Shown: one piece after another, positions 1 to 30,907 of the stretch
How the letters are laid out: every line of letters begins with the position of its first letter
How positions within the stretch are numbered: position 1 is the first letter of the stretch
Virus record (IMG/VR): IMGVR_UViG_3300028666_000022
Coordinates: 248,001-312,000 of that record
DNA: 64,000 nt
Strand: one strand, 5' to 3'
Notes under the pieces: model-generated
Database searches by the model: none
What the model was told of the DNA's origin: nothing
The model's input: only the letters and a program-made list of their open reading frames with translations
Program-made: the position numbers and the translations under genes

Positions 1-681
1 ATTTCCTCGATATAGTCTTGATGTTATTAAATTGCTATCAATAACAAATTCACTTTTACATATATTACAATAAAAATGCACAACACCATTATCACGTTTA
101 ATAAATTTTAATGTATCATCATTAATTCTGTTTAACATACGTTTTAGATTGAATTCATCTCCACTTAAAACTAATTGTTTTCTATTATCAATAACTGATT
201 GAATTTTCATTGGACTATCAACACCATAATTATTAAATAATGTATTATTAAATTTTTCTCTAATTTCCTTAGATTGTAAAGGACTTTCAACTCCATAATT
301 TTTAAGTGTAGTTTGCTTTTTCTTTTCTTTAACAGAATCTAATTGGTTATGGCTCTCAACACCATATTTATTCATATTACTATCTTTAATTTTTTCTTTA
401 TGTTCTTCTGAGGAATTTAAACAATTAATTGAACAATATTTACTATGTCCCTTATTAAGAGTATCGACAAATTTTACGTTATTACCACAATTTGGACATT
501 TAGGAACATCTTTTAAATCATTAATATAAAGATAAACTTTTTCTTTAAAAGGAATTGTTTTATCATTTGAATTTTCAATAATTGCAGTATATAACTCATT
601 ATGATTTTTACTAAGCCAATTTTCGGTTGTTTTAAATCCAGATTTATTGTCTTTTAAAAAGAAATCTTTTACATTTTCCAT
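1..681 (-). CDS. Zn-finger/KYGV-repeat homing-endonuclease-like protein, N-terminal part (runs off window start)
   Basis: Absent from the ORF track because it has no stop inside the window. Hand translation from ATG 681 gives MENVKDFFLKDNKSGFKTTENWL...PKCPNCGNNVKF...KYCSINC...KYGVESHNQ...KNYGVESPLQ, open to base 1. Same Zn unit as ORFs 1957 and 29435. Confidence 0.75.
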   Translation of the reverse strand, partial: MENVKDFFLKDNKSGFKTTENWLSKNHNELYTAIIENSNDKTIPFKEKVYLYINDLKDVPKCPNCGNNVKFVDTLNKGHSKYCSINCLNSSEEHKEKIKDSNMNKYGVESHNQLDSVKEKKKQTTLKNYGVESPLQSKEIREKFNNTLFNNYGVDSPMKIQSVIDNRKQLVLSGDEFNLKRMLNRINDDTLKFIKRDNGVVHFYCNICKSEFVIDSNLITSRLYRGN

Positions 682-705
682 ATTATTTAAAATTTTTATT
701 ACAAA

Positions 706-1338
706 TTATTTTATGTTTAACCATGTCTTTCCAAGAATTATTGAAGATATTGTTGCTTGTGTTACATTGTATATTTTAGCTATTTTTGTTTGTGTAAAAT
801 TTTCCACAGTAAATAACTTTCTAATATTTATTATGTCATCAGATTTTAATTTCGACATTGGGTGTTTTTCACATGTAAAAATTCCTTTTCTACTTATAGA
901 AATTTTGTTTTTACTTTCTTCGGAGAGTTTATAATTAAATTTTGGATGTAAATTTCCTTTCTTACCATACATAGGATTTTTATCACCAGTTTTTTGATTA
1001 GAAGGAATTTTAGTATCTTTATTAAGATTTTTATTTATGTGAATTTCTTTTGGATCATTAATGTTATAACCAAAATTCTTATCAAATGAATTGTAATATA
1101 AAATATATTCCTTTTCTTTAGTTAATAAGTCATCAAGTTTACATTCTTCAACTATGAAAAATTCAAAAGCAGTTATAGTATATTTGTTCCAAGATAATTG
1201 TAGATGAGAGTTGTGATGTTTATTGTGATTTAAATACCATTTGTGATCACGCCATCTTTTACTTATATTGGTAGAACTACCAATATAAATTTTATTATTT
1301 ATTTTATTAACAATTATATAAATTCCAGTTATTATCAT
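706..1338 (-). CDS. GIY-YIG homing endonuclease with NUMOD3-like repeats and C-terminal HTH
   Basis: GIYIIVNKINNKIYIGSS, conserved Arg (KRW), KEKEYI Glu, FGYN, GDKNPMYGK/HPMSK motifs. Start moved to ATG 1338 (MIITGIY). Confidence 0.88.
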   Translation of the reverse strand: MIITGIYIIVNKINNKIYIGSSTNISKRWRDHKWYLNHNKHHNSHLQLSWNKYTITAFEFFIVEECKLDDLLTKEKEYILYYNSFDKNFGYNINDPKEIHINKNLNKDTKIPSNQKTGDKNPMYGKKGNLHPKFNYKLSEESKNKISISRKGIFTCEKHPMSKLKSDDIINIRKLFTVENFTQTKIAKIYNVTQATISSIILGKTWLNIK

Positions 1339-1401
1339 ACAATAAAAATTTAACCACAAATACAAATATTATATCTGTGGTTACTATAATTAAAATTAAT
1401 T

Positions 1402-1893
1402 TTACAAATTAAGAATGCATCGCCAAGGTTGTATCGTTAATTGAACTGTTTGAAGTGCATCATCTTCATAACTACTTTCTCCAAAATCAATTGCAACAAT
1501 TTGACATTGTTCAAGAAACCATTTTTCAACCTCAATACCAGTAGGATCTAATGCTTTAAGAAGGATATTTTTTGCATAACCAGATTTATAACCTTGCCTC
1601 CCAGTAAGGCTTTCAGCGTGTAATCGAACCCACTCCATTAATTGTTGTGATGTTGATGGACCAATAGGATCAAGAAATGTAATTTGCATTTCATCCCAAG
1701 TATATCTACCTGCAACATAATTCTGTTCATTCATAAATTGAATTGGAACTGAATTTATTTTCATTGAGGGTCTTTTAAATTTTTGTACTTTCCATACTTC
1801 GATCCCAAGTTCGTCAGCAAATTCTGCAAAGAATCTGTTTACTCTCTTAGGTTCAAAAGTCATGGGTATACCCCTGATTAATTCACCAGCCAT
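1402..1893 (-). CDS. gp19: Tail tube protein (T4 gp19-like)
   Basis: 163 aa; EPKRVNRF, YVAGRYTWDEMQITFLDP, EWVRL, LDPTG.EVEKWFLEQC pattern of myovirus tube proteins; nearest structural neighbour of the sheath gene. Confidence 0.85.
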   Translation of the reverse strand: MAGELIRGIPMTFEPKRVNRFFAEFADELGIEVWKVQKFKRPSMKINSVPIQFMNEQNYVAGRYTWDEMQITFLDPIGPSTSQQLMEWVRLHAESLTGRQGYKSGYAKNILLKALDPTGIEVEKWFLEQCQIVAIDFGESSYEDDALQTVQLTIQPWRCILNL

Positions 1894-1949
1894 AGTATTT
1901 ATATTAAAAATAAAGTTATCATTATAATCTTATGTTTAACATAAATACT
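1894..1949. promoter_or_regulatory. Divergent pair of candidate late-promoter motifs (AGTATTTATA on + at 1894-1903; AGTATTTATG on - at 1940-1949)
   Basis: The same motif recurs upstream of most structural genes in the window, in their sense orientation. Confidence 0.55.
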
Positions 1950-1956
1950 GAATATT

Positions 1957-3336
1957 TTGGAAAATGTAAATAAAAAAGAATTGATTGAATATTTTCTCAC
2001 AGATAATCAATGTGGTTATAAAACAAGAGAAAAACACATAATAAAAAAATTTAATGGTTTAATTGATTTAATTAATGATTATAATCAAAAATATTTTGAT
2101 GATGAATTACCATTTACACAAAAATTATATGATTACTTATATGAAATTACAGAAATTCCTAAATGTAAAAATTGTGGTAATTTAATAAAATGGAGAGGTG
2201 TTTTTACTGAAGGATATTTAAAATATTGTTCTAAAAAATGTAGAAATGAAGTAATGCCAAAAATAATGAATGAAGCAATAGTTGAATTATATGGAGTTAA
2301 AAATATTTTTCAATTAGATAAATTTAAAAATGAAAGGTGGAATACAGGAAATAATAAAATAATTGAACATTTTAAGTTAAGTGGTTTTGAAGTAATCGAA
2401 AGCAATAAGAAAACATTAAAAATTAAACACCCAGATGGTCATATTTTTGAAGGAAACAGAAAAATACTAATAAATAGATTAAATCGAGGTATTGAAGTTT
2501 CTACTAAAATATTACCTATTGGCTCAACATTTTCTACAATAGAACTTGAAATTAGAAATTTTATTAATACACTAAACATTCAACATTCGTTAAGCGATAG
2601 AAAAATATTAAGTGGTAAAGAATTAGATATTTATTTTCAAAATAATAAATTAGCAATTGAATTTGATGGTTTATATTGGCACTCCGAAAATTTTCTTCCA
2701 AACGATTATCATTTAAATAAAACTGAACAATGTGAAAAACAAGAAATTGAATTATTGCACATATTTGAAGATGAATGGTTATGTAAAGAAAAGATTGTAA
2801 AATCGATAATAAAATCTAAGTTAAATATATTTGACACAACAATAGATGGTAATAAATGTTCAATTAAAGAAATTGATGAGATAGAATGTAATAAATTTCT
2901 AAGTAATAACCATATATTTAATTCTATTGAAAGTGATATTAGAATTGGTTTGTTTTATGATGATGAATTAATGTTGGTTATAACATTTAAAAATAATTCA
3001 AATAATGAATATGAAATATTAAGTAATTGCAATAAATTAAATACTAACATACTTAATAGTAACAATAAACTAATAGAATATTTTAAAGCTAAATATCAAC
3101 CATCTTCAATAACAATTTTAGTCGATAGAAGATATTCAAATGGAAATGAATATAAAGATCTTGGTTTTAATTTTATTAAGAATACTGAACCAATCTATTG
3201 GTATTTCGATAAAAATTCAATAATAAAATTTAGTCGTTTTAAAATAAAACCTGAAGATGAATCTACATTGGATAAAAGATTTCTAAAAATTTTTGATTGT
3301 GGTAGTATAAAATTTGAGTTAACCCTTAAAAAATAA
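1957..3336 (+). CDS. Hef-like homing endonuclease: Zn unit + PD-(D/E)xK (ELDIY...IEFDGLYWH) + GNAT-like C-terminal domain
   Basis: CKNCG...YCSKKC; HPDGHIFEGNRK core shared with ORF 8081-9568; DRRYS...GF...IFDCG tail. TTG start is supported by the (M)ENV N-terminus shared with the 681 paralogue. Confidence 0.75.
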   Translation: MENVNKKELIEYFLTDNQCGYKTREKHIIKKFNGLIDLINDYNQKYFDDELPFTQKLYDYLYEITEIPKCKNCGNLIKWRGVFTEGYLKYCSKKCRNEVMPKIMNEAIVELYGVKNIFQLDKFKNERWNTGNNKIIEHFKLSGFEVIESNKKTLKIKHPDGHIFEGNRKILINRLNRGIEVSTKILPIGSTFSTIELEIRNFINTLNIQHSLSDRKILSGKELDIYFQNNKLAIEFDGLYWHSENFLPNDYHLNKTEQCEKQEIELLHIFEDEWLCKEKIVKSIIKSKLNIFDTTIDGNKCSIKEIDEIECNKFLSNNHIFNSIESDIRIGLFYDDELMLVITFKNNSNNEYEILSNCNKLNTNILNSNNKLIEYFKAKYQPSSITILVDRRYSNGNEYKDLGFNFIKNTEPIYWYFDKNSIIKFSRFKIKPEDESTLDKRFLKIFDCGSIKFELTLKK

Positions 3337-3403: not shown

Positions 3404-4783
3404 ATGAAACAACAAGAATTGATTGTAAAGATCCTCACCACATTGAAAGAAATAGAATTATGTACTGGTGAAGGTTCAGTAAAGAAGAAAGCAAATCTAC
3501 TAAATGATTGCAACACTCTTATATCTCAAGACGATTCTAATTTACTAAAATTTATTTTATCTACGGCATTTAATCCTTTCTGGGTAACTCATATAAATAA
3601 GATTGATAAAACAGAAAATAAATATTTCAATGATTATGATTTTTATACTCTCGTTGAAATGTTAAAATCTCTTAAAGCAATGAATAATGATCTTCGTTAT
3701 GTTGTTACTGCTTATGTTAACAGTTTTCCTTTAGAAGTAAGAGATATACTTTCAAAAGTTTTAACAAAAAATTTAAATATTGGAATATCTACAAAGGCAA
3801 TTAATTCTGTTTTTTCTAAACTAATTCCAGACGTAGAGTTAATGAAATGTGAAAAGAAAATTTCTCTTGTTGAAGAATGGTTTAGAAAGGGAGAGGATGT
3901 ATTTGCTGAAATGAAATATGATGGTTGGAGAATTTTTGCTGAAATGAAGGGTACTGAAGTAGTTTCATTGAAAACATATAATATGAGTGAGTTAGATATT
4001 ACAAAAATGACACATATTGTTCCACAGCTTGAATTATTGGGAGCTTCTTGGATGAAAACTGTAAATGTTGAACATTATTTCTTTGACTTTGAAATCACTG
4101 GAAAAGAAAGACAAACTGTAGGTGGAGAAATCGGAAAACTTCTTAAAGGAACTGCAAAAGAAGGTTGTGATAAGAATTGGGTAGTGAATTTATTTGATTG
4201 CCATTCTTGGGATATTTTTGAAGACGTACCAAGTAAAATATCATATTTAAATAGAAGGTCTATATTAGAAATTGTATTTAATTCAACATCAGAAATGCCT
4301 AATCTTCAAATTTCTGAACGTTGGAAAGTTAATTCAATGGAAGAATTAAACACTTTATTTGCTAATGTATTAGAACAAGGTTGTGAAGGTCTTGTTGTTA
4401 AAGTAGGTTCAGGAGTTTATGAACTAAAATATTCTAACTTTTGGGTTAAAATGAAAAGTGAAAAAGAATGTGATCTTAGAATTATTGGTTGGTTTAAGGG
4501 TAAAACTGGAACAAAACGTGAAAAAACTATTGGTGGGTTTGTTTGTGAATCTGAAGATGGTAAATTAAATGTAGATCCGGGTTCTGGGTTTTCGGATAAA
4601 TTATTAGCTGAAATAATAGAAAATGGTGTAGATTCATATATTGGAAAAATTGTTGAAGTAAAATATAATACTATAATTTCAAAAAAAGATAGTGATATTA
4701 AATCTTTATTTCTTCCTAGATTTAAAAGATTTAGATTTGATAAGAATTATGCAGATACTTTAGAAAGAATATTAAGTAAATAA
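3404..4783 (+). CDS. lig: ATP-dependent DNA ligase
   Basis: Motif I EMKYDGWR, FFDFEI, NLFD, EGLVVK, WVKMK and OB-fold SLFLPRF. Confidence 0.93.
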   Translation: MKQQELIVKILTTLKEIELCTGEGSVKKKANLLNDCNTLISQDDSNLLKFILSTAFNPFWVTHINKIDKTENKYFNDYDFYTLVEMLKSLKAMNNDLRYVVTAYVNSFPLEVRDILSKVLTKNLNIGISTKAINSVFSKLIPDVELMKCEKKISLVEEWFRKGEDVFAEMKYDGWRIFAEMKGTEVVSLKTYNMSELDITKMTHIVPQLELLGASWMKTVNVEHYFFDFEITGKERQTVGGEIGKLLKGTAKEGCDKNWVVNLFDCHSWDIFEDVPSKISYLNRRSILEIVFNSTSEMPNLQISERWKVNSMEELNTLFANVLEQGCEGLVVKVGSGVYELKYSNFWVKMKSEKECDLRIIGWFKGKTGTKREKTIGGFVCESEDGKLNVDPGSGFSDKLLAEIIENGVDSYIGKIVEVKYNTIISKKDSDIKSLFLPRFKRFRFDKNYADTLERILSK

Positions 4784-4793
4784 AATAGTAATC

Positions 4794-4955
4794 ATGAGAC
4801 AAGAAGGTTTTTATTGGGTAAAAGGTTATAAATGGTCGGAAAATCCTAGATGGTTTATAGCAGAATGGACGTTAGGTAGTTGGTGGTGTCATGGTGATGA
4901 TTACGATGATGATAGTATGTTAAAAATTGATGAAACACAAATAATTAGAGATTAA
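4794..4955 (+). CDS. Small Trp-rich hypothetical protein (53 aa, below track cut-off)
   Basis: Hand translation MRQEGFYWVKG...QIIRD*, filling the gap after the ligase. Confidence 0.55.
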   Translation: MRQEGFYWVKGYKWSENPRWFIAEWTLGSWWCHGDDYDDDSMLKIDETQIIRD

Positions 4956-4969
4956 TTAATAATATTTTT

Positions 4970-5206
4970 ATGAAAGATTTTTATGTTGAATCCTCAGTTA
5001 AATACACCAATCCTAATGACGGCAAACCATTTAATGATACTGAATTTTATACATCTATAATTCAGGCAAATTCATTAAAAATTGCTGAAAATATAGCGAA
5101 AGAAGATGTTTTGAAAATATTTAATGAAGAAATTAATGATGAATTTGAAAACATTTATGTCGAAATAATACAGAGTTATGAGACTTCCGATGATGCTCGT
5201 TCTTAA
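4970..5206 (+). CDS. Hypothetical protein
   Basis: ORF track; co-directional, tightly packed; no motif recognised. Confidence 0.6.
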   Translation: MKDFYVESSVKYTNPNDGKPFNDTEFYTSIIQANSLKIAENIAKEDVLKIFNEEINDEFENIYVEIIQSYETSDDARS

Positions 5207-5232
5207 AATAATTTTTAAATAATAAATATTTT

Positions 5233-5508
5233 ATGATTAAAAAGGGTGATAGATTACTTGTATGGTCATTACAATCTTTCTCAAATGGTGGATTTTTAAA
5301 AGGTGAACCAGCTTTTGCACGGCAAAGTAGCAATGGAGATAGTGTTATTCTTTGTGTAATTAGAAACTTTAATGGAGAATATAAGATAGATGAAAGTTAT
5401 GAAGTTTATATAAAACAAGTTGAAAGTGTGACAAAGGATAATTGGAATGCAGAAAAGAAATTAAAAAAATTTAGAAAAGTTATAATATTAAATAATGCAA
5501 TTTCATGA
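5233..5508 (+). CDS. Hypothetical protein
   Basis: ORF track; co-directional packing. Confidence 0.6.
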   Translation: MIKKGDRLLVWSLQSFSNGGFLKGEPAFARQSSNGDSVILCVIRNFNGEYKIDESYEVYIKQVESVTKDNWNAEKKLKKFRKVIILNNAIS

Positions 5509-5535
5509 AATTATTAATAAAATAAAAATTAAGTA

Positions 5536-5733
5536 ATGGATTTGAACGTAAATACAGATAAAAGAATTACTGAAACCCAAAATATTTCAGTAATACCAGC
5601 AATGTTAGATACATTATGGAATATTTTTGAGAAATTGGATATAAATTTACCAATTCATTCGATGGAAGCACGAATAAAATTTGATGGTGCTATTATTTAT
5701 TGGTTAAAATTTATATCTGAAAATAATGAATAA
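5536..5733 (+). CDS. Hypothetical protein
   Basis: ORF track; co-directional packing. Confidence 0.5.
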   Translation: MDLNVNTDKRITETQNISVIPAMLDTLWNIFEKLDINLPIHSMEARIKFDGAIIYWLKFISENNE

Positions 5734-5753
5734 TTTAAATTCACACTTATATC

Positions 5754-5879
5754 ATGTTAACAGAATTATTAAAAAAAGAATGTGTTTGTCATACGTGCAA
5801 ACCTATTTCAACAGATGAATTTGGTAGAAAATATTTTATATGTGATAACTGTGGTAAAATAGTTTATATTAAATTTTAA
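5754..5879 (+). CDS. Small Zn-ribbon protein (41 aa)
   Basis: Hand translation MLTELLKKECVCHTCK...CDNCGKIVYIKF*, two CxxC pairs. Confidence 0.5.
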   Translation: MLTELLKKECVCHTCKPISTDEFGRKYFICDNCGKIVYIKF

Positions 5880-5889
5880 TTTTAAATAA

Positions 5890-6426
5890 ATGGCATATAG
5901 TAAAGAAAAATTAAAACCAAGTAATAATTTAGTAGAATTATTATCACCAATTGTTTTTAAAAATGTTAGAAGTACTTCTGAACATAAAACTAGTAGAGTA
6001 AGACAATGTTATGCATGTGGTAATAAAATAAATAAAAACGATAATTATATTAATCATCAATTTAAATATGATGGTAGAATAATTACAATATCTTTTTGTG
6101 TTGATTGTTTTAATGAAAATCAATTATTACCTAATGGAGATGAATTAATTACAAAAATTCATTTTGTTTCAAAAAACGAAAAAATTACTGTCATTAATAA
6201 GTATTCTATGAATAAAATAGATGATTTTATGAAAGAATTTCCTAGAAGAAATAAGTTGTATGAATGTACTCCTTCTGAACTAGCAATTTCTAAAGCAATA
6301 GAAGAAGTAGAAAAAATTGGTGCTCATGTTAAATTAACTGAAGTAATTATTAAATTAATTGAAGCAAGAGAATTAGTAAGTGATTTTACTGATGATACTT
6401 TAAAATTATGGAAAAGTTTAGAATAG
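5890..6426 (+). CDS. Hypothetical protein with CxxC...CxxC Zn-binding N-terminal half
   Basis: CYACG...CVDC; the second half (from MNKIDDF) may be a fused separate domain. Confidence 0.6.
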   Translation: MAYSKEKLKPSNNLVELLSPIVFKNVRSTSEHKTSRVRQCYACGNKINKNDNYINHQFKYDGRIITISFCVDCFNENQLLPNGDELITKIHFVSKNEKITVINKYSMNKIDDFMKEFPRRNKLYECTPSELAISKAIEEVEKIGAHVKLTEVIIKLIEARELVSDFTDDTLKLWKSLE

Positions 6427-6860
6427 TAGTAATTGAAACAACTAATGGTAAAGGTGAAACTAAAACCAGTTATAAGATTCAAAAAAAATTCTTATTTTGG
6501 TTTTTTGATTATAATATAATAACCCATTATTATACTAATACAAATTGGAATGCAATAAATGAGCCTACTCATATGGTATTTTTAACTAAAAGAATATTTA
6601 TTTTTAATACAATAACAAAAGCAACAGAATATTTAAATAAAATTCAAAATTCCTTTATTGAACAATATGATGGAGATAAGATAATCAGAGTTTTTGATGA
6701 TTATAATTGGACTGACACCTATATTAATAAAAGCTATTGGAGCATTGAAATAGATAGGCTTGGAATTAGTATAGGATATGAATATTCAAACAATCTTTCA
6801 AGTTTAAAAGAAATGATAGATGTTAGAAAAACTAAAACAAAAATTAATGTTGTAATATAA
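6408..6860 (+). CDS. Hypothetical protein
   Basis: ORF track; overlaps the upstream stop. Confidence 0.6.
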   Translation: MEKFRIVVIETTNGKGETKTSYKIQKKFLFWFFDYNIITHYYTNTNWNAINEPTHMVFLTKRIFIFNTITKATEYLNKIQNSFIEQYDGDKIIRVFDDYNWTDTYINKSYWSIEIDRLGISIGYEYSNNLSSLKEMIDVRKTKTKINVVI

Positions 6861-6899
6861 ATTTAAAAACTGTATATTTTTAATTAAAAATTAAATAAA

Positions 6900-7259
6900 A
6901 TGAAAAACAAAACTTTGATTACCCACTTAACCCGGCTTTGCTTATGTGCATTATTAGCGGGCGTTTGTTTTAGTTCATTTGGACAAAAGAAGATGTTTAT
7001 TGAATGTTATAATAACTTTGAAAATAAAAGAGTTTGTGATACGACTTATGAATATTTCCGTTCAGACACTTCTGTAATTCATATTATATACGCAGATAGT
7101 TTAGATATTATGAAATATTCAAAAGCAATAAAAGTGATTAGTGGTTATGGATATGAAGGATATTTTGATTTAGAAAATAACGTTCAAATTTTTATCCGAT
7201 ATAAAAATAAATGGCTTGAAATAAATAGAAGGCGTATTTGGAAAATTCAAACCGATTAA
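6900..7259 (+). CDS. Hypothetical exported protein (signal-peptide-like N-terminus)
   Basis: MKNK + hydrophobic LCLCALLAGVCFSSFG-Q. Confidence 0.55.
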   Translation: MKNKTLITHLTRLCLCALLAGVCFSSFGQKKMFIECYNNFENKRVCDTTYEYFRSDTSVIHIIYADSLDIMKYSKAIKVISGYGYEGYFDLENNVQIFIRYKNKWLEINRRRIWKIQTD

Positions 7260-7331
7260 TATTATTGGATACGAAATGTCCAATAACTTTTATATATAAG
7301 ATTTATTAAATAATAACAAAAAAACATTAAA

Positions 7332-7652: not shown

Positions 7653-7664
7653 ATACACATAGAA

Positions 7665-8080: not shown

Positions 8081-9568
8081 TTATTTACAATCATCCTTCC
8101 ATATACTTTTCCCACAATCAAATATTTTATAATATTTTTTATCTTTACCTATTAGTTCCTTATTTATTCTTCTTTTCTTAACAACATATTTATAGTCGGG
8201 TTTAATATGTTTAATAAATCTAAAACCTAATTTAAGATATTGATTATCTTTAGAATATCTTCTATCATCGAAAGCAATTATTGAAGTTGATACATAGTTT
8301 GACTTAAAGTATTGATATAATTCAATTAGTTTATCTTCGTGATTTTCATTAAGTTTATCAGAAAAATATTGTAATTCATATTCATCATTTTCTATTGATT
8401 TAAAACACATAAGAGAAACTAAATCAGTATTATAGAATAGACCAATTCTAACATCACTTTTAATAGAATCACATAAAGAATTATTATATAGAAAATTATT
8501 TGCATCTATTTCACTAATAGGTTTAATATAGTAATTATTAATATTAGTGTTTTTAGTATTAAGATTCAATTTAGTTCTTATAATATTCTCGATTATTTCA
8601 TATTTTTCAATTAGTTCATCTTCAAAAAAATGTAATAATTCAATTCCTTTCTTTAAGCATTGTTCGGTTTTATTTAGATGATATTTTTTATCATGATATT
8701 TTTCACAGTGCCAATATAAACCATTAATTTCAATAGCTATTTTATATTTAGGAATGTAAATATCTAACTCACCCTTAATTGTTCTTCTATCGTTGGAAAT
8801 ATATTTAATATTATTTTCTTTTAAGAAATTACATATTTTTATTTCAAATGTAGTTCTAGGTGATCCTATTGGTAATAAAACAGTTGATATTTCAGTACCA
8901 TGATTTAATCTACTATTTAATAATTTTCTGTTGCCTTCAAATATATGACCATCTGGATGTTGAATTTTGAGATATTTATTATTAAACTCCAATATTATAT
9001 AACCCTTTTCTTTAAATTTTTCAACTAATACCTTATCTCTTTTTTGTTTTAATTTTAAATTATTATTTTCTACTACTTTCTTCCCTTTTTCACTTTTATA
9101 TGTTTTTCTAAGATTTATAAGTGCTTTTTCTCTTAATGAATCTACTTGAAAAGTGCTTTCTACACCATATTTCTTAAGATTAGCTTCTTTTGTTTTATTA
9201 ATTCTTGATTTTATATTTTCGGGTTTGGCTTGCCAAGATTTTCTACATTTTTCTGAACAGAATTTTCTTTTATGTTTTACTCTTTCTGAAAATACTTTAC
9301 CACAAACTAAACAAGTTCTTTTTTCTTTGGATTTATTTGTTCTCATTTTACCTGCACATTTATATGAGCAGCATTTTTTATCGTCTTTCTTTTTGGATGT
9401 AAATAATTTATTACAACATTCACAATGTTTTTCTATATAAAATATTTTATCTTTTTCTTTTCTGTGCTCAAGTTTACATTTTTTACAACAAAATAATTTT
9501 TCTCTTCCTTTAATTACAGTGAATGATTTATTACACTGTTGACAAACTAATTTAATTATTGTTGCCAT
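8081..9568 (-). CDS. Hef-like homing endonuclease: three short CxxC...CSxxC units + KYGV repeat + PD-(D/E)xK + GNAT-like domain
   Basis: Start moved to ATG 9568 (MATIIKLVCQQC); ELDIYIP...IEINGLYWH; paralogue of 1957-3336. Confidence 0.78.
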   Translation of the reverse strand: MATIIKLVCQQCNKSFTVIKGREKLFCCKKCKLEHRKEKDKIFYIEKHCECCNKLFTSKKKDDKKCCSYKCAGKMRTNKSKEKRTCLVCGKVFSERVKHKRKFCSEKCRKSWQAKPENIKSRINKTKEANLKKYGVESTFQVDSLREKALINLRKTYKSEKGKKVVENNNLKLKQKRDKVLVEKFKEKGYIILEFNNKYLKIQHPDGHIFEGNRKLLNSRLNHGTEISTVLLPIGSPRTTFEIKICNFLKENNIKYISNDRRTIKGELDIYIPKYKIAIEINGLYWHCEKYHDKKYHLNKTEQCLKKGIELLHFFEDELIEKYEIIENIIRTKLNLNTKNTNINNYYIKPISEIDANNFLYNNSLCDSIKSDVRIGLFYNTDLVSLMCFKSIENDEYELQYFSDKLNENHEDKLIELYQYFKSNYVSTSIIAFDDRRYSKDNQYLKLGFRFIKHIKPDYKYVVKKRRINKELIGKDKKYYKIFDCGKSIWKDDCK

Positions 9569-9598
9569 AATATGTTTAACATAAATAATACGAAATAA

Positions 9599-9648: not shown

Positions 9649-12414
9649 TTAAGCTCCTAGGTCTACAAATGATGCACCTGAAGGAGTAATTGTAAAAGTT
9701 ACTCCAATGTATTCTATGCTACGAGTTGGTTTTAACATTATCTCCCCGTAAAGCTCATTTCTGTCCATTGTCTCTGGAGTATTATTACTATCGTCCATTT
9801 TTAGTTTGAAATCAAGCAATCCTCTTTCTCTTTTTACTGTATCAAGAATTGGAGTAGCTTTGCTTAAGAACTGATCAATCGTTGTTTGATCATTTTGTTC
9901 AAAAACAAGTCTTATTGCAATGTTTGAAATTAAAACTTTTAGTTGAAGTAATAATCTACGAACATTAATTCTATTTAAAGCACTTTCTTTTACCTGTAAA
10001 GTTTTCTGTCCAAAGATTGCAGTACCAGAATCAGCAAAGTCAGCCATTGGATTTATACGACCTGTTCCGTACAGAAGATCCCTCGCCTCAGTAGATAATT
10101 TATATTTAGATTTTATTGCACCAGTTACACCTCTCTGTAAACCTGCTGGAGCAAACCAAGGATAAGCAACATTATCAGTAAATGCCATTGCTTTAACTAC
10201 TTCACCAGTAGGTGGAATATAAACATTGATATTATTCTGAGTATCCCTCATTTGTATCCAAGGAAAATAAGTACAAGCATAATTACTATCAATACCTGAA
10301 GTATCCATTAAATCAACAATATCTTGAGCAGCTAGTACATCTTGTTTAGTGCCACCAATTGTTTGAGGTATATCAACATCAGGACTATCAACAATATAAA
10401 GAGTATCAGTCCTTTGAGTTTCAATCATAGTGATGGTATCTTGTACTAAAATATTTTCATCACTCCAATTAATACCGGGAGTAGCAAAAAGATTGATTGT
10501 AACAGCTTCTGGATTTGCAAAAGTGTTGATTGCTGTTTCCCATGCTTGAAAATCATTAGTTGCAGAAACATTAGGATCTACACCATCGTAAATTCCACCT
10601 TGGGTATATAAATCACCATAAGAACGTGAACCTCTATTAACATCCCAACCATCAAAACCACCTGAAGGTACTAATGTGAATTTTCTAGTAGCTATAGCAT
10701 AATAAGTATTTAATGGATTAACTACATCAGAAATACCTCTAAATTGACCAGCACCTACCTCAAATTGACCAACTAATTCAGTTCCATCATGAAATGTTCC
10801 GGTTGCACCACTATCCATATGAAAACCTTTAGATTTAGTAAAACTTTCAGCATTACTATCACCAGTATTATTCCAACCATTATAATTAAAAAGGTTCTGA
10901 TTAATTCCATTTCCTACAACACCAGTTGCATTATAACCACTATTTGAAAGACCTAGATAAAAACGAGCTACTCTTTCATTTGGTTCATATTGTGTTTTAT
11001 AAAAAATCTTAGGAGCAATACCAGCTTTACCTGAAGTAGTTGTAGTTGCAGAAATAGCATAGTTATTAAGCATATAACCTTCAAAACCTGCTGGAAATGA
11101 ATCTGGATGTGCTTCTGTTGGCAATTCAACCATAATATATTTACTTAAAAGATTGTATTCACCATCAGTAGTACCAATTCTCTGCCCAATAAATCCAGAT
11201 GTACCCTTAGTCATATTACATTTAGTATATGTTTCTAAAATGTTTTGACTATCATCAGTATCATAAAAACTACGAACAACTACATCAAATTCTAAAGTAA
11301 TTGGATTAATGTTTTGTATACTAACCTTAATTTCTTGATTTGCAGCATCACCATCTGATATAGAAACAAATTTAAATAACCTACTTAATTTATTACCCTT
11401 TAATTGAGATACTACCCAAGGAGTTTCAGGTGTCTTAAATTGTGTTCTACGATTTGTAAATACACTTGATTTACAATCAATCAAAGTAGTATTAATTGCA
11501 TACCCAAATCCTTCTGCATCTAATTTTTTAATTAAATTAGAATAAACTGCTTCTGTCCAGATCTTACTTTTTTTGTCTTTTGCATCAATTCCTATAACAT
11601 TAGGTAAGAAATTACTTGCATCTGGATTTAATGAAACGCTATATGTTTCTGTTGAACCTGTAGAAACTGCGGTTAAGACGAAATTTCCAAAAAGATCACC
11701 ACTTGTGGTGGTTGTATTAGCACTTATGGTTAATGTACTAGTATCGAATACTGTAGTTGAAGGTAAATTTATATTATCTTGAACATAACCTCTACTTCTT
11801 ACTACTGCAAGAACCATATTTTCGTATTGACTATAAGAGGAACCTGAAAGTCTCGTAACTGTTTGATTTACAGTGCCTCCCGTAAGAGATAAATTTGTGA
11901 TCAGAAAAGTTATCGAATCTCCGGTGAATTGGGTTGCATTTATTTTTGTGAATCCTAAGAAGGTTGTTCCTGTTTGACCAGTTGCATAAATAGTAACACC
12001 TAAATATTCTGTTCCTGTAAATGGTACACCTGTTTGAGAACTACTAGAAACAATTCCTTCTGTAGCAGGATCAACTCCAGCACTTAATGTTATTGCCCAT
12101 GCTTTTCCAGCATCATAACCGCTAAGTCCCAGAATACGAGTTACATACATCTGATTTGACTCAGACATGTAAGCGTTAGCTATGTATGGAAGCTGATATT
12201 GTAGTTGATTATTTGTTGAAAATCTTTTAACACTCTGTGAACCAAATCTTTGTGCAAATTCACTTTGATCTTGTATAAAGATAGGTTCAAATGCTGGCCC
12301 CTTTAATGTTTCCCCAACAAGTCCTAACGTGGTAATACCTACGTTTTTCGAAACAAAACTCATGTCTCTCTCGATATATTTGACTCCTGGCGATGTGAAT
12401 ACAAATTCTGACAT
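9649..12414 (-). CDS. gp18: Tail sheath protein (T4 gp18-like)
   Basis: 921 aa; FTSPGV N-terminus, WFAPAG..RG, GRINP, GQKTLQ...ALNRINVRRLL, KPTRSIEYI. Confidence 0.95.
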   Translation of the reverse strand: MSEFVFTSPGVKYIERDMSFVSKNVGITTLGLVGETLKGPAFEPIFIQDQSEFAQRFGSQSVKRFSTNNQLQYQLPYIANAYMSESNQMYVTRILGLSGYDAGKAWAITLSAGVDPATEGIVSSSSQTGVPFTGTEYLGVTIYATGQTGTTFLGFTKINATQFTGDSITFLITNLSLTGGTVNQTVTRLSGSSYSQYENMVLAVVRSRGYVQDNINLPSTTVFDTSTLTISANTTTTSGDLFGNFVLTAVSTGSTETYSVSLNPDASNFLPNVIGIDAKDKKSKIWTEAVYSNLIKKLDAEGFGYAINTTLIDCKSSVFTNRRTQFKTPETPWVVSQLKGNKLSRLFKFVSISDGDAANQEIKVSIQNINPITLEFDVVVRSFYDTDDSQNILETYTKCNMTKGTSGFIGQRIGTTDGEYNLLSKYIMVELPTEAHPDSFPAGFEGYMLNNYAISATTTTSGKAGIAPKIFYKTQYEPNERVARFYLGLSNSGYNATGVVGNGINQNLFNYNGWNNTGDSNAESFTKSKGFHMDSGATGTFHDGTELVGQFEVGAGQFRGISDVVNPLNTYYAIATRKFTLVPSGGFDGWDVNRGSRSYGDLYTQGGIYDGVDPNVSATNDFQAWETAINTFANPEAVTINLFATPGINWSDENILVQDTITMIETQRTDTLYIVDSPDVDIPQTIGGTKQDVLAAQDIVDLMDTSGIDSNYACTYFPWIQMRDTQNNINVYIPPTGEVVKAMAFTDNVAYPWFAPAGLQRGVTGAIKSKYKLSTEARDLLYGTGRINPMADFADSGTAIFGQKTLQVKESALNRINVRRLLLQLKVLISNIAIRLVFEQNDQTTIDQFLSKATPILDTVKRERGLLDFKLKMDDSNNTPETMDRNELYGEIMLKPTRSIEYIGVTFTITPSGASFVDLGA

Positions 12415-12689: not shown

Positions 12690-12706
12690 ATAAATTATAA
12701 ATTAAA

Positions 12707-18800: not shown

Positions 18801-18838
18801 TAAATTTAAATATTTATTATAAATACTTAATAAAACAA

Positions 18839-27364: not shown

Positions 27365-27367
27365 AAT

Positions 27368-28129: not shown

Positions 28130-28135
28130 CTATAA

Positions 28136-28213: not shown

Positions 28214-28215
28214 TT

Positions 28216-28773: not shown

Positions 28774-29204
28774 TAGTGCATTTCAATTTTATAATTATTA
28801 ATATCTTCCTTTGGAAAATATTGTTTTAATTTACTTTTAATGTCATTAATAACATTATTTGGTAGATAATCATCCCAAAATGAAATAGTTTTAAAATCAA
28901 TCCAAATCCTTCCCCAATAATTTGTTTTATTCTTTATCTTATAAAACATGGCTTCATCTTCAGGTAATTTTAAATTGAAATTCTGAATAATCGCATCACC
29001 ATGTGCTCCACCTTCTTTAGAAACAATTAAATTATCATCATAAACAGAAAAAGCATAAGTATTTGAATTCCTAAAATAATTTGTTTCACCATCAACAGTA
29101 AGATGCTCAACACCTTCACTAATACTGAATTTATTATCTATTCGTAAAGTATTCTCAAATAATATCCTCTTGTTGCTTTTGAAATTCATGAAATGGAATT
29201 TCAT
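28773..29204 (-). CDS. Hypothetical protein
   Basis: ORF track; AGTATTTAT directly before the ATG. Confidence 0.55.
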   Translation of the reverse strand: MKFHFMNFKSNKRILFENTLRIDNKFSISEGVEHLTVDGETNYFRNSNTYAFSVYDDNLIVSKEGGAHGDAIIQNFNLKLPEDEAMFYKIKNKTNYWGRIWIDFKTISFWDDYLPNNVINDIKSKLKQYFPKEDINNYKIEMH

Positions 29205-29292
29205 ATAAATACTGAAAAAATAATTGTAAAATATTGATCTTTTTCGTAAATATTTAGTATTTATATTTGTAGTTCAAATAAACAACATTGAT

Positions 29293-29454
29293 ATGGGATA
29301 TTCAAAAGACAAAGACAGGACATTAGGCATAAGACTTGATGTAGATCTCAAAAAGAGATATTTAAAATTTATTAGTGATAATGGATATTCATTATCGAAA
29401 AGAATAAGAGTTTTATTGGAAAATGATATGAAAAATGAAAAAAACAGTATTTGA
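29293..29454 (+). CDS. Ribbon-helix-helix DNA-binding protein (53 aa, below track cut-off)
   Basis: Hand translation MGYSKDKDRTLGIRLDVDLKKRYLKFISDNGYSLSKRIRVLLENDMKNEKNSI*; alternating beta-strand, helix, G-x-S-x-S turn, helix. Overlaps the next gene by 20 nt. Confidence 0.7.
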   Translation: MGYSKDKDRTLGIRLDVDLKKRYLKFISDNGYSLSKRIRVLLENDMKNEKNSI

Positions 29455-30907
29455 TGACATTAGTAGTTTTACTAAGGAAGAACTGAAAATCTGGTTTAAC
29501 ACAGATAATATTGGTGGTCATAAATGTAGAGAAAATTTTATTTTTGAACATTATCCTGATTTACATAAAGAAATTCTTGAATATTCAAAAATAAACCCAG
29601 ATGTCATTAATTGGAAAGAAAAACTATTTAATTATTTAAATAATTTAATTGAAAATCCTAAATGTAAAAATTGTGGAAAAACTTTACATATTAGTACAAA
29701 ACATAAAAATTATCCAACATTTTGTTCAAAAGAATGTTATGATAAAAAACGAAATTTTAAACCAAAAAAAGAAAATATTGATATTAGTGCTTTTTCTAAA
29801 GAAGAATTAAAAGAATGGTTTTTATGTAATAATTATGGTGGGTATAAAACACGGGAAGATTGGCTTAAATTACACTATCCAATTCTTTTAGATAAAATAT
29901 TAAAAAATACTAATGAAATTAATTTAAAATTAAAGGCAAAAATTTATTTATATATTTATGATTTAAAAGAAAGTCCGAAATGTCAAGAATGTGGAAATAA
30001 ATGTAATTTTAGGGATCATTTAACAGAAGGTTTTACTAAATATTGTTGCAATAAATGTTCTCTTAAACAAAGTAGAAAATATAATGGGAAAAATAAAGTG
30101 AATATAGAAAATTATGCATCATTCTCTGATTTTATTATTAAGAATTATAAAAATGGTATGAGTTCAAACGAATGTTACATAAAAGAATCTAATCCAATTG
30201 AATATAATGAAATTATTAATCTACCAATTAACTTAAATAATATTCCTTGGAGAGAGAAATTATATAATTATACACATGGAATCATAGAAAGACCAATATG
30301 TCCTGAATGTGGTAAACCAGTGAAATTTAAAAATTTTAATAAGGGTTATAGAAAATTTTGTTCAAAAAAATGTCAAATAGTTTTTATTAATAATATAATA
30401 AGAAATAATTATAATATTATTATAGCTAAGAGAAAAGAAACTAATTTAAAAAAATATGGTGTTGAACATGCTGCGCAAAATAAAGAAATACAGGAAAAAA
30501 TACAACAAACTATAATTGAAAAGTATGGAGAAATTTATGCAAAATATATTCCAAAATATAATATTAATTCAATAATATATTTAGATATTTTAGCTGAAAA
30601 ATTAAATCTTCATATACAACATGCTTTAAATGGTGGGGAAAAAAGATTTATAAAATATTGGATTGATGGATATAGTGAAAAATATAATGTATGTATAGAA
30701 TGGAATGAAAAATATCATTACACAAAAAAGAATATCGAAAAAGATATAAAAAGAAATAAATTTTTAGTTGAAAATTTTAGGTGTAAGATGATTTATATTA
30801 AAGAAAAAGAATTTTTAAAAGATGTTGAGAAAAATATTGAGATATTATGTAATGAAATAAATGAATATATTAAAACTAAAACTGTTTTAGAACCCACTAA
30901 ATACTGA
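29435..30907 (+). CDS. Homing-endonuclease-like protein: three ~95-aa Zn units + KYGV repeat + Vsr-like PD-(D/E)xK domain
   Basis: Three P.C..CG...CS..C units; KYGVEH; GGEKRFIKYWIDGY...IEWNEKYH. Confidence 0.75.
   Translation: MKKTVFDDISSFTKEELKIWFNTDNIGGHKCRENFIFEHYPDLHKEILEYSKINPDVINWKEKLFNYLNNLIENPKCKNCGKTLHISTKHKNYPTFCSKECYDKKRNFKPKKENIDISAFSKEELKEWFLCNNYGGYKTREDWLKLHYPILLDKILKNTNEINLKLKAKIYLYIYDLKESPKCQECGNKCNFRDHLTEGFTKYCCNKCSLKQSRKYNGKNKVNIENYASFSDFIIKNYKNGMSSNECYIKESNPIEYNEIINLPINLNNIPWREKLYNYTHGIIERPICPECGKPVKFKNFNKGYRKFCSKKCQIVFINNIIRNNYNIIIAKRKETNLKKYGVEHAAQNKEIQEKIQQTIIEKYGEIYAKYIPKYNINSIIYLDILAEKLNLHIQHALNGGEKRFIKYWIDGYSEKYNVCIEWNEKYHYTKKNIEKDIKRNKFLVENFRCKMIYIKEKEFLKDVEKNIEILCNEINEYIKTKTVLEPTKY

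What the first reader, a model, noticed from the sequence alone, without database searches (positions are those of the whole stretch)
1..30907. Family of natural modular zinc-finger nucleases with shuffled DNA-binding units
Seen: a ~95-aa unit (F..DN..G.KT.E....Y..L...KLY.Y......PKC..CG......Y..YCS..C) occurs once in ORF 681, once in 1957 and three times in 29435. ORF 9568 instead has three ~35-aa CxxC...CSxxC units. KYGV repeats and two different PD-(D/E)xK heads (GLYWH type with a GNAT-like tail; IDGY...IEWNE type) are combined freely, and each copy sits beside a conserved virion gene. Inference: recognition units are swapped to retarget one nuclease scaffold, which would make this a programmable architecture.
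Basis: partly seen in the sequence, partly recalled or inferred. Interest (0 to 1): 0.6.

Follow-up and report, generated by a model that had tools for sequence, protein, structure and literature searches.

The report
Hef-like modular phage homing endonucleases
The four genes are selfish "homing endonuclease" genes of the known Hef-like (Vsr-like, EDxHD) family in a 340-kb jumbo phage. They are built from interchangeable DNA-binding modules, but nothing shows that the modules form a programmable code.

Summary
A ~95-aa unit (four helices plus a Cys4 zinc ribbon) occurs once in the ORF ending at w681, once in ORF 1957 and three times in ORF 29435. ORF 9568 has three short Cys4 ribbons instead. 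All four carry a strict 23-aa "KYG" repeat (Pfam DUF7487), in 1-3 copies here and 1-15 in relatives.

The interpretation needs correcting. These are free-standing homing endonuclease genes of the known Hef-like family. Both nuclease "heads" are Vsr-like: I-Bth0305I and Vsr each give Z 9.2, and a family profile hits 3r3p at E 7e-6. The "GNAT-like tail" is a phage-Mu Mom-like domain.

In 80 related phage contigs, tail sheath and tail tube usually have no detected gene between them. Hef-like genes appear only sporadically, at four fixed sites around them, as expected of mobile elements.

Module shuffling is supported. The unit forms same-site clades, while the nuclease+Mom part does not (AU p=0.012). 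The unit occurs in 3,905 cluster representatives, in arrays of up to five, and is fused to several nuclease types.

"Programmable" is not supported. No simple code is visible, KYG copy number varies among same-site genes, and DNA binding and cleavage were not tested. These are new members of a known kind whose modules are uncharacterised.

The parts
1..681 (-). HEF_A: window part of a 510-aa Hef-like homing endonuclease gene (full gene w-851..681). The nuclease and Mom-like tail lie outside the window.
   Evidence: Full ORF from the genome. Architecture unit-KYGx3-hefnuc-mom. PHROG 3339 and Pfam DUF7487.
409..675 (-). HEF_A recognition unit (aa 3-91): helical part plus Cys4 zinc ribbon
175..381 (-). 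HEF_A: three 23-aa KYG repeats (aa 101-169)
   Evidence: Pfam DUF7487 E 2.8e-15
706..1365 (-). GIY-YIG homing endonuclease with NUMOD3 and HTH, lying between the tail tube gene and HEF_A. It is a different family but part of the same cluster of mobile genes.
   Evidence: Present or absent at this site in relatives.
1402..1893 (-). Tail tube gene: the conserved neighbour flanked by HEF_A/GIY-YIG and HEF_B
   Evidence: PHROG 4542; 77-91% identical in 80 relatives
1957..3336 (+). HEF_B: 459-aa Hef-like homing endonuclease, architecture unit-KYGx1-Zn/beta linker-Vsr-like nuclease-Mom-like tail
   Evidence: AF2 model pLDDT 92
1978..2253 (+). HEF_B recognition unit (aa 8-99); C70, C73, C91, C95 invariant in 60 homologs
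2275..2343 (+). HEF_B single KYG repeat (aa 107-129)
2353..2538 (+). HEF_B 'mid' domain (aa 133-194): three strands plus a helix. Most homologs carry a C..H..GH...C pattern here.
2539..2844 (+). HEF_B Vsr-like (EDxHD) nuclease core; D224, E235, G238, H242, K255, E271, E273 invariant
   Evidence: Profile A1 hits the I-Bth0305I catalytic domain 3r3p at E 7.3e-6.
2848..3321 (+). HEF_B Mom-like GNAT-fold tail (aa 298-455); the Mom S124 equivalent is N
8081..9568 (-). HEF_D: 495-aa Hef-like homing endonuclease, architecture 3 short Zn ribbons-KYGx1-mid-Vsr-like nuclease-Mom-like tail
   Evidence: start codon
9227..9556 (-). HEF_D: three ~33-aa Cys4 zinc-ribbon units; net charge +24
8546..8848 (-). 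HEF_D Vsr-like nuclease core
   Evidence: Pfam Vsr E 1.2e-6
8096..8542 (-). HEF_D Mom-like tail; the Mom S124 equivalent is I
9649..12414 (-). Tail sheath gene: the conserved neighbour upstream of HEF_D
   Evidence: PHROG 23
29293..29454 (+). 53-aa small ORF with a ribbon-helix-helix-like sequence pattern, overlapping the start of HEF_C by 20 nt. It travels with the endonuclease at this site in other genomes.
29435..30907 (+). HEF_C: 490-aa endonuclease, architecture unit x3-KYGx2-compact Vsr-like nuclease, no Mom-like tail
29480..29749 (+). HEF_C unit 1 (aa 16-105)
29804..30070 (+). HEF_C unit 2 (aa 124-212)
   Evidence: positional orthologues in P0126, P0127, P0128
30119..30382 (+). HEF_C unit 3 (aa 229-316)
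30440..30577 (+). HEF_C: two KYG repeats (aa 336-381)
   Evidence: Pfam DUF7487
30545..30904 (+). HEF_C compact Vsr-like nuclease; D411, E422, E425, H428, D437 invariant in 19 homologs
   Evidence: VIA Z 9.2 to 3r3p and to 1cw0; invariants
47776..49686 (+). Outside the flagged span: a 636-aa protein with the same Mom-like domain at its N-terminus (aa ~73-251), fused to a GIY-YIG nuclease plus NUMOD3

Best explanation
The four ORFs are free-standing homing endonuclease genes of the Hef-like branch of the Vsr-like (EDxHD) homing endonuclease family. They have colonised intergenic sites next to conserved, probably late-expressed genes of a ~340-kb, 24%-GC jumbo myovirus related to the T4 superfamily.

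Each protein is a tethered nuclease. A basic N-terminal region is built from interchangeable modules: one to three ~95-aa helical + Cys4 zinc-ribbon units, or three short zinc ribbons, followed by one to three 23-aa KYG repeats and a small Zn/beta linker domain. This region is inferred to bind a long DNA target in genomes that lack the gene.

A C-terminal Vsr-like PD-(D/E)xK domain then cuts nearby. Repair from the endonuclease-carrying genome during co-infection copies the gene, and probably its flanks, into the same site.

The unit is inferred to be the main site-determining module, because it is the part that stays constant among genes at one site. The KYG array is inferred to be a less specific, length-variable DNA-tracking element. 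The Mom-like GNAT tail of the Hef-type copies is probably a DNA-binding or structural accessory in this genome, since the catalytic serine is lost in B and D.

Shown: the domain composition, the folds, membership of the Hef-like family by similarity, sporadic site-specific presence or absence, and incongruent module phylogenies. Inferred: DNA binding, cleavage, homing, and which module reads what.
For: Family identity:
- PHROG 3339/559 'homing endonuclease' at E 1e-20 to 1e-81.
- tblastn hits 404 phage records annotated 'Hef-like homing endonuclease', with 10-12 places per genome in Campylobacter CP81-type phages.
- At least 2,293 relatives of B.

Nuclease:
- The profile of 60 B homologs hits the I-Bth0305I catalytic domain (3r3p) at E 7.3e-6, with the D...E.[DN]G.YWH core aligned.
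- The nuclease of the C model matches 3r3p (Z 9.2, rmsd 2.9, 94 aa) and Vsr-DNA 1cw0 (Z 9.2, 102 aa).
- Invariant acidic and His residues are present.
- Taylor et al. 2011 already placed Hef-type enzymes in this family (PMC3239194).

Mobility:
- In 80 IMG/VR relatives no gene or family module is detected between sheath and tube in most.
- Hef-like genes occur in only about 6, 4, 4 and 2 of them, at four fixed sites.
- At the C site, three relatives carry a kinase-like gene and no endonuclease, one carries a different Hef-type gene, and two carry orthologues of C.

Module behaviour:
- The unit tree gives same-site clades (94/96, 93/90, 100/99).
- The nuclease+Mom tree breaks the B-site group. 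The AU test rejects its monophyly (p=0.012), and the L003 nuclease groups with the genes found before the sheath.

Other:
- The N-terminal modules are basic (pI 8-10; +24 for the three ribbons of D), whereas the nuclease and tail are acidic.
- B and D carry the same promoter-like motif as the structural genes.
- LIMEstone1 also has a Hef-like gene next to its tail tube gene (PMC3296691).
Against: - No cleavage, binding or homing data exist for any of these proteins or, as far as I could find, for any protein with this unit.
- The host is unknown, so homing cannot be observed.
- No target-site 'immunity' polymorphism was found in the tail tube gene of endonuclease-carrying versus endonuclease-free genomes.
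- The incongruence test rests on one clear recombinant (L003). The A-site group is not rejected (p=0.47).
- The fold of the unit and of the KYG array could not be searched on their own, so their DNA-binding role rests on charge, zinc-ribbon motifs, position and analogy.
- The dimer prediction gave no answer, so whether one molecule nicks or a dimer cuts both strands is open.
Confidence: 0.78

Rival explanations
1. One reading: a naturally programmable nuclease architecture. Each Zn unit (and/or each KYG repeat) reads a defined DNA subsite independently, so swapping or re-ordering units retargets a constant nuclease scaffold.
For: - Units occur in arrays of 1-5 across relatives.
- They are fused to at least four nuclease types.
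- Unit clades track the insertion site while nuclease bodies are exchanged.
- Unit 1 of C has no positional orthologue in P0126/P0127, although units 2 and 3 do. This hints at replacement of a single unit.
Against: - The units within one array are only 25-36% identical in the MAFFT alignment and show no small set of variable 'code' positions.
- 1,265 KYG repeats vary diffusely at 7 or more positions.
- KYG number differs among same-site genes.
- Units 2 and 3 of C are inherited together in fixed order.
- 95 of 140 top hits have a single unit.
- There is no evidence that a unit binds DNA on its own, or for additivity.
Confidence: 0.1
2. A cut-and-protect element. The Mom-like GNAT tail is an active DNA-adenine modifying domain (as in phage Mu Mom) that protects the carrier genome's own target sites, or its DNA in general, while the Vsr-like domain attacks unmodified competitors.
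For: - The tail matches the Mom crystal structure 8bv8 as the top Foldseek hit (E 3.4e-5) and by VIA (Z 12.0, 145 aa).
- The Pfam Mom family hits homologs at E 1e-6 to 3e-10.
- The equivalents of Mom S124, D149 and R151 are S-D-R in 108 of 208 distinct tails; D149 is kept in 87%.
- Mom acts on dsDNA (PMC13219725).
- The same domain is also fused to a GIY-YIG nuclease.
Against: - None of this genome's copies scored has the full triad: A is S-D-K, B N-D-R, D I-D-R, F N-D-R, the GIY fusion N-D-D and the stand-alone copy S-D-D.
- S124A inactivates Mom (title of PDB entry 8bv8; PMC13219725).
- C and G lack the tail altogether yet persist.
- The HTH-like insertion that is essential in Mom was not examined.
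Confidence: 0.1
3. Inter-phage competition nucleases rather than true homing elements. They cut the DNA of related co-infecting phages (marker exclusion) or host DNA, giving the carrier an advantage. Their spread is a by-product.
For: - At least seven paralogs sit in one genome, next to essential late genes.
- They carry promoter-like motifs shared with structural genes.
- Published work links phage homing endonucleases to exclusion and to boundaries of genetic exchange (PMC10448857 and PMC13096335, titles and abstracts).
Against: This is not exclusive with homing. The site-specific presence/absence pattern is what homing produces, and there are no data on exclusion here.
Confidence: 0.15
4. 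Decayed relics: the ORFs are no longer active nucleases and persist as DNA-binding proteins or neutral passengers.
For: The Mom-like tails are degenerate in B and D. Split or truncated copies exist in relatives (L076, L078).
Against: All four ORFs are intact, with every invariant nuclease residue of their families.
Confidence: 0.05

Closest known systems
Hef (phage U5) and 'Hef-like' free-standing homing endonucleases of T4-related, ViI-like, Campylobacter and jumbo phages (Sandegren et al. 2005, as cited in PMC2988022 and PMC3296691)
   Same: There is direct sequence similarity over 64-98% of the length at 27-40% identity. They fall in the same PHROG families. They are likewise free-standing, multi-copy, and lie beside structural genes; one LIMEstone1 copy sits next to the tail tube gene.
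   Different: The copies here come from an uncultured 340-kb phage. One (C) has a triple unit and a compact nuclease without the Mom-like tail. I found no published dissection of the N-terminal modules.
I-Bth0305I and the EDxHD (Vsr-like) homing endonuclease family (PMC3239194; PDB 3r3p)
   Same: The C-terminal catalytic domain has the Vsr fold with the same active-site pattern. The N-terminal region is a modular DNA-binding region, and the target is long.
   Different: I-Bth0305I is intron-encoded and uses two NUMOD2/HTH motifs. The proteins here are free-standing and use zinc-ribbon units, 23-aa KYG repeats and (in the Hef type) a Mom-like tail.
NUMOD-type modular homing endonucleases such as I-TevI and I-HmuI (concept cited in PMC3239194; details from my own knowledge)
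   Same: The principle is the same: a catalytic cartridge is tethered to strings of small, reusable DNA-binding modules, including a zinc finger, and the modules are shuffled between nuclease families.
   Different: The modules differ. The unit is not covered by any Pfam model except its zinc-ribbon half, weakly (YacG-like). The KYG repeat is DUF7487, not NUMOD1-4.
Engineered zinc-finger nucleases (C2H2 arrays + FokI) and natural zinc-ribbon HNH endonucleases (PMC3592412)
   Same: Zinc-binding modules are joined to a nuclease domain, and tandem arrays exist.
   Different: These are Cys4 ribbons within a 95-aa domain, not 30-aa C2H2 fingers. No 3-bp-per-finger code is known, the nuclease is Vsr-like, and dimer dependence is unknown.
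Phage Mu Mom (PDB 8bv8; PMC7261163, PMC13219725)
   Same: The tail has the GNAT fold. Family consensus keeps the equivalents of S124, D149 and R151.
   Different: Here the domain is fused to nucleases rather than stand-alone, and the catalytic serine is replaced in B and D. No modification activity is known.

Membership tests
Vsr-like / EDxHD homing endonucleases (incl. Hef-type) | Catalytic domain with the Vsr-type PD-(D/E)xK fold | tested here: met
   C model residues 373-486: 3r3p Z 9.2 and 1cw0 Z 9.2. B/A/D type: profile A1 vs 3r3p at E 7.3e-6; Pfam Vsr E 1.2e-6 for D.
Vsr-like / EDxHD homing endonucleases (incl. Hef-type) | Conserved active-site residues (acidic residue in the first strand, E.[DN]G..H motif, downstream acidic residue) | tested here: met
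   B: D224, E235, G238, H242, K255, E271, E273 invariant in 60 homologs; the same letters are seen in A and D. C: D411, E422, E425, H428, D437 invariant in 19 homologs. The residue-level match of C to 3r3p was not printed; the hhalign match to the Hef type is weak (E 0.003).
Vsr-like / EDxHD homing endonucleases (incl. Hef-type) | Sporadic, site-specific presence or absence among related genomes (mobile element behaviour) | tested here: met
   80 loci around the tail tube gene; the C site.
Vsr-like / EDxHD homing endonucleases (incl. Hef-type) | Site-specific double-strand cleavage of the empty allele, and gene conversion | not testable with these tools
   Needs biochemistry or co-infection.
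Hef-like (PHROG 3339/559) | Full-length sequence similarity to annotated Hef-like proteins | tested here: met
   PHROG 3339 at E 9.7e-81 (B), 3.4e-56 (D), 6.9e-20 (window part of A) and 3.3e-21 (C; N-terminal modules only). tblastn to PTm1, PM2, Pm5461 and CP81.
Pfam DUF7487 (KYG repeat region) | Match above the gathering score | tested here: met
   A 57.3 bits and C 33.1 bits against a cutoff of 27. B and D have a single repeat and fall below Pfam detection, but are found with a custom repeat HMM.
Pfam Mom family / phage Mu Mom | GNAT fold resembling Mom | tested here: met
   8bv8 is the top Foldseek hit; VIA Z 12.0 over 145 aa. Pfam Mom hits homologs P0006, P0012, P0051 and P0111, but not the window's own copies at E<0.1.
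Pfam Mom family / phage Mu Mom | Catalytic residues S124, D149, R151 | tested here: not met
   Window copies: A S-D-K, B N-D-R, D I-D-R. The family at large has S-D-R in 108 of 208 tails.
Pfam Mom family / phage Mu Mom | N6-adenine carbamoylmethylation of dsDNA | not testable with these tools
   Needs nucleoside LC-MS.
Zinc-finger nucleases in the engineering sense | C2H2 beta-beta-alpha fingers, each reading ~3 bp | tested here: not met
   The units are Cys4 (C66, C69, C87, C91 invariant), inside a ~95-aa domain with four helices. The only zinc-domain similarities are weak YacG and MYND matches.
Zinc-finger nucleases in the engineering sense | Non-specific cleavage domain that must dimerise | tested here: inconclusive
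   Homodimer prediction of B 190-459 gave no answer.

The most novel reading that the evidence does not exclude
The ~95-aa helical + Cys4-ribbon unit, which no Pfam model describes, is an autonomous sequence-reading module. Natural arrays of one to five units, extended by KYG repeats, read DNA additively. Exchanging units would then retarget Vsr-like, TnsA-like or GIY-YIG-type nuclease bodies, giving a natural 'polydactyl' nuclease platform distinct from C2H2, TALE and LAGLIDADG scaffolds. A second novel element would be that consensus-type Mom-like tails actively modify DNA to protect the carrier.
Probability: 0.12. Interest if true: 0.75.

Novelty: new member of a known kind. Interest (0 to 1): 0.38.

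Why it matters
For annotation, these genes should be called Hef-like (Vsr-like/EDxHD) homing endonucleases, not a new system.

For biology, the window shows how heavily a jumbo phage's structural-gene region can be colonised by selfish nucleases. There are four Hef-like genes, three GIY-YIG genes and three possible intein-like inserts in 64 kb.

The comparative data give a first, purely computational hint about which module fixes the target: the unit rather than the KYG array or the nuclease.

The unit (3,905 cluster representatives), the KYG repeat (DUF7487) and the nuclease-fused Mom-like domain are abundant in phage metagenomes yet experimentally untouched. A single biochemical study could define a new class of nuclease-associated DNA-binding modules. 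It could also show whether they are useful for tethered-nuclease engineering.

Tried and rejected
- blastn of 5.2 kb of the window against 50,697 phage records found no match, so there is no close cultured relative.
- Sequence searches of the PDB with whole proteins gave only weak YacG hits for the zinc ribbon. A tail-only profile did not reach Mom by sequence, so Mom was aligned from the phage Mu record instead.
- Whole-model fold searches were dominated by the GNAT tail (B) or the nuclease (C). I do not claim these modules have a new fold.
- I looked for a TALE-like code in 1,265 KYG repeats. Variability is spread over positions 4, 10-12, 14-15 and 21, with no hypervariable pair.
- I looked for nucleotide positions in or around the tail tube gene that distinguish endonuclease-carrying from endonuclease-free genomes, as a possible target or immunity site. 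Nothing was found inside the gene. The differences upstream of about -60 are simply the inserted gene.
- Homodimer prediction for the nuclease + Mom-like part of B returned 'no answer' (score 0.01). It counts neither for nor against dimerisation.
- Literature searches for DUF7487 and for Mom-like + Vsr found no papers. The original Hef paper (PMC1275590) is not held.
- I rejected the idea that the two heads are unrelated PD-(D/E)xK families. Both match Vsr and I-Bth0305I, and the iterated compact-nuclease HMM also picks up Hef-type nuclease domains.

Full report
**Setting.** The window is bases 248,001-312,000 of a single 339,898-bp contig with about 24% G+C. The region encodes:
- a tail tube protein (w1402-1893, minus strand)
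- a tail sheath protein (w9649-12414, minus strand)
- an ATP-dependent DNA ligase (w3404-4783)
- a gp23-like major head protein (w51272-52945, minus strand)

The head protein's nearest relatives are uncultured huge phages, Flavobacterium and Microcystis myoviruses, and more distantly T4-type phages. The genome is therefore a jumbo myovirus of the wider T4 superfamily. It has no close cultured relative, and its host is unknown.

**Check of the observation.**
- Unit matches between the paralogs have phmmer domain E-values of 1e-10 to 1e-20.
- ORF 29435 has three units. ORF 1957 and the ORF ending at w681 have one each. ORF 9568 instead has three ~33-aa Cys4 ribbons.

Corrections:
- The ORF ending at w681 continues outside the window. 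It is a complete 510-aa protein with the same nuclease and tail as ORF 1957.
- ATG 9568 is the likely start of ORF 9568. A terminator hairpin after the sheath gene overlaps the upstream GTG, and a promoter-like 17-mer identical to the one before the tube gene lies just upstream of the ATG.
- The "KYGV repeat" is a strict 23-residue tandem repeat with consensus T.L.KYGVE.P.Q..EI.EK.K..
- The whole genome holds at least seven full family members, two further ORFs with the nuclease core, and two further proteins with only the tail domain.

**What the genes are.** All four fall in PHROG families annotated as homing endonucleases. By tblastn, ORF 1957 matches 404 phage records. Many are annotated "Hef-like homing endonuclease", and Campylobacter phages of the CP81 type carry 10-12 matching places per genome. 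The word-index search returned at least 2,293 relatives of ORF 1957 and 585 of ORF 29435.

Hef was defined in phage U5 as a free-standing homing endonuclease (cited in PMC2988022). Taylor et al. placed Hef-type enzymes in the Vsr-like "EDxHD" homing endonuclease family, whose prototype is I-Bth0305I (PMC3239194).

I confirmed that placement here:
- A profile of 60 homologs of ORF 1957 hits the I-Bth0305I catalytic domain (3r3p) at E 7.3e-6, with the active-site core aligned.
- The nuclease part of the AlphaFold model of ORF 29435 matches 3r3p and the Vsr-DNA complex 1cw0, each at Z 9.2.
- The residues expected of an active enzyme are invariant in both types.

One is long and carries a tail; the other is compact and has none.

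**The tail.** Pfam's Mom family hits close homologs. The high-confidence model of ORF 1957 (pLDDT 92) has the phage Mu Mom structure 8bv8 as its top Foldseek hit, and GNAT enzymes reach Z 12-13.

Mom is a GNAT-fold enzyme that modifies adenine in double-stranded DNA using Gly-tRNA (PMC13219725). I aligned Mom from the phage Mu record with the tails and counted 208 distinct tails. The equivalents of Mom S124, D149 and R151 are S-D-R in 108 of them.

In this genome none of the copies scored has the full triad: A is S-D-K, B N-D-R, D I-D-R. I therefore read the window's tails as DNA-binding or structural accessories, while noting that about half of the family might be catalytically competent.

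The same domain also sits at the N-terminus of a GIY-YIG endonuclease at w47776-49686 and in a stand-alone 324-aa protein elsewhere in the genome. The tail is thus itself a shuffled module.

**Mobility.** I fetched 80 related loci around the tail tube gene from IMG/VR and labelled their ORFs against this genome and against custom module HMMs.

In most relatives the labelling finds no gene between sheath and tube, and the next conserved gene follows the tube. The sheath-tube gap ranges from 62 bp to about 3.4 kb. Hef-like genes occur only sporadically, at four fixed sites:

| Site | Loci carrying a Hef-like gene |
|---|---|
| After the sheath gene | L017, L023, L068, L069, L078; remnant in L076 |
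| Before the tube gene, opposite strand | L003, L036, L077, L078 |
| After the tube gene | L017, L070, L076; split copy in L078 |
| Before the sheath gene | L020, L056 |

A GIY-YIG gene is present after the tube in about 30 loci. The window has the first three sites occupied at once.

At the site of ORF 29435:
- Three relatives carry a co-oriented kinase-like gene and no endonuclease.
- One relative (L084) carries a Hef-type gene of different architecture.
- Two other genomes (LR756498.1 and a JGI contig) carry orthologues of ORF 29435 in exactly the same slot.

This is the distribution expected of free-standing homing endonuclease genes. LIMEstone1 offers a published parallel, with a Hef-like gene beside its tail tube gene (PMC3296691).

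**Modularity.** Custom HMMs for the unit, the KYG repeat, the short ribbon, the "mid" domain, the two nucleases and the tail were applied to 240 homologs. The result is combinatorial:
- zero to three units or three short ribbons
- one to fifteen KYG repeats
- either nuclease, with or without the tail

A profile of the unit searched against 1.84 billion representatives found 3,905 proteins at E <= 1e-3 and 671 at E <= 1e-10. Among the 140 new top hits:
- Unit counts per protein were one (95), two (16), three (21), four (4) and five (4).
- 29 proteins were short and carried no nuclease.
- 40 longer proteins had no recognised Hef-type nuclease. Some of these carry a TnsA-like nuclease domain or T5orf172.

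ESM Atlas neighbours additionally suggest HNH partners for the KYG array and methylase partners for the unit. These are leads only. No Pfam model covers the helical half of the unit, and its ribbon is weakly YacG-like. No paper in the library mentions DUF7487.

**Which module follows the target?** Site groups were named from gene order before any tree was built.
- In the unit tree, genes at the same site form clades: before-tube 94/96, after-tube 93/90, before-sheath 100/99.
- In the nuclease+tail tree, the before-tube group is broken up. The AU test rejects holding it together (lnL difference 46, p=0.012), and the L003 nuclease groups with the before-sheath genes.
- The after-tube group is not rejected (p=0.47), and the after-sheath group is a clade for both parts.
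- Module-wise identities agree. Same-site units are 54-72% identical to the window's copy, whereas nucleases are 38-62% identical and often closest to another paralog.
- KYG copy number differs among same-site genes (1, 4, 4, 5).
- In ORF 29435, units 2 and 3 have positional orthologues in P0126, P0127 and P0128. Unit 1 does not, although unit 1 of P0126 and P0127 match each other.

These data support recombination between recognition and catalytic parts, and they point to the unit as the site-linked module. They do not show independent, additive reading by each unit. The 1,265 KYG repeats show diffuse variability rather than a code.

**Mechanism proposed.** The N-terminal modules are basic and the catalytic parts acidic. 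I propose the following sequence, all of it inferred:
1. A late-expressed, tethered nuclease binds a long target in an endonuclease-free co-infecting genome through its unit(s), KYG array and Zn/beta linker.
2. It cuts nearby with the Vsr-like domain.
3. The gene is copied into the break by recombination repair.

Whether one molecule nicks or a dimer cuts both strands is open, because a homodimer prediction gave no answer. Cleavage, binding and homing are all untested.

**Comparison and novelty.** The genes are new members of a known kind: Hef-like EDxHD homing endonucleases with modular DNA-binding regions. The principle was established for NUMOD-bearing enzymes.

They are not zinc-finger nucleases in the engineering sense. 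The units are Cys4 ribbons in a large helical domain, and no per-unit code is known. What is not in the literature I could search is:
- the anatomy of the N-terminal modules
- their arrays of up to five units
- the link between unit and site
- the nuclease-fused Mom-like domain

That gives the finding moderate interest. The "programmable" reading remains a low-probability, high-value possibility.

Noticed in passing
window 29293-29454 (+); also L091:2859-3017, L093:2856-3011, L084:8775-8933 (-), genome 175293-175412 (-): A conserved ~50-aa ORF with a ribbon-helix-helix-like sequence pattern lies directly upstream of ORF 29435 and overlaps its start. Homologs (51-65% identical) precede its orthologues in two other genomes, a differently built Hef-type gene at the same site in L084, and the paralog with the same compact nuclease elsewhere in this genome. 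It may be a regulator or partner that travels with the endonuclease. No Pfam hit.
   Followed up: partly
window 3404-8003, between ORF 1957 and ORF 9568: A ~4.7-kb block (ATP-dependent DNA ligase plus six small ORFs) lies between the two Hef-like genes, inside what is normally the sheath-tube gap. No homolog of it is seen in the sheath-tube region of any of 80 relatives. In five large relatives the best ligase match lies elsewhere in the genome and is only 27-34% identical. It may be cargo brought in alongside the endonuclease genes.
   Followed up: partly
window 1895-1908 (+), 1935-1948 (-), 9571-9587 (-), 12681-12694 (+), 18813-18826 (-), 32028-32041 (-), 56616-56629 (+), 63071-63084 (-): The promoter-like motif GTATTTATNNTAAA occurs 7 times against 0.15 expected, always shortly upstream of a start codon. 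Genes preceded include the tail tube gene and ORF 1957. An identical 17-mer, TATTTATGTTAAACATA, precedes both the tube gene and ORF 9568. The same core is conserved before the tube gene in relatives.
   Followed up: partly
window 47776-49686 (+): A 636-aa protein combines an N-terminal Mom-like GNAT domain (the same family as the Hef tails) with a GIY-YIG nuclease and a NUMOD3 motif. The tail domain is therefore shared between two unrelated nuclease families.
   Followed up: partly
window 49755-51164 (-) and 706-1365 (-): Two further GIY-YIG homing endonuclease genes are present. One lies next to the major head protein gene and appears to have two GIY-YIG-like stretches. The other lies between the tail tube gene and the Hef-like gene ending at w681.
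   Followed up: no
window 21763-23283 (+), 40452-43019 (+), 54637-56544 (-): Three genes look interrupted by endonuclease- or intein-like inserts. A thymidylate synthase has an endonuclease family match at aa 118-370. A DNA helicase has a LAGLIDADG match at aa 402-496. A head maturation protease has an extra N-terminal region matching a composite thymidylate-synthase PHROG.
   Followed up: no
genome 164669-166546 (-), 174255-175268 (-), 314841-316424 (-), 121182-122468 (-), 212098-212889 (-), 41405-42379 (+) (outside the window): Further family members lie elsewhere in the genome: a 625-aa copy with nine KYG repeats, a 337-aa copy with six repeats and the compact nuclease, and a 527-aa copy. 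There are also two ORFs with only the Hef-type nuclease core and a stand-alone Mom-like protein.
   Followed up: partly
L081:7121-7960 (+): In three relatives the slot occupied by ORF 29435 holds a 279-aa P-loop kinase-like gene instead. This intergenic position is therefore a general hot spot for variable genes.
   Followed up: no
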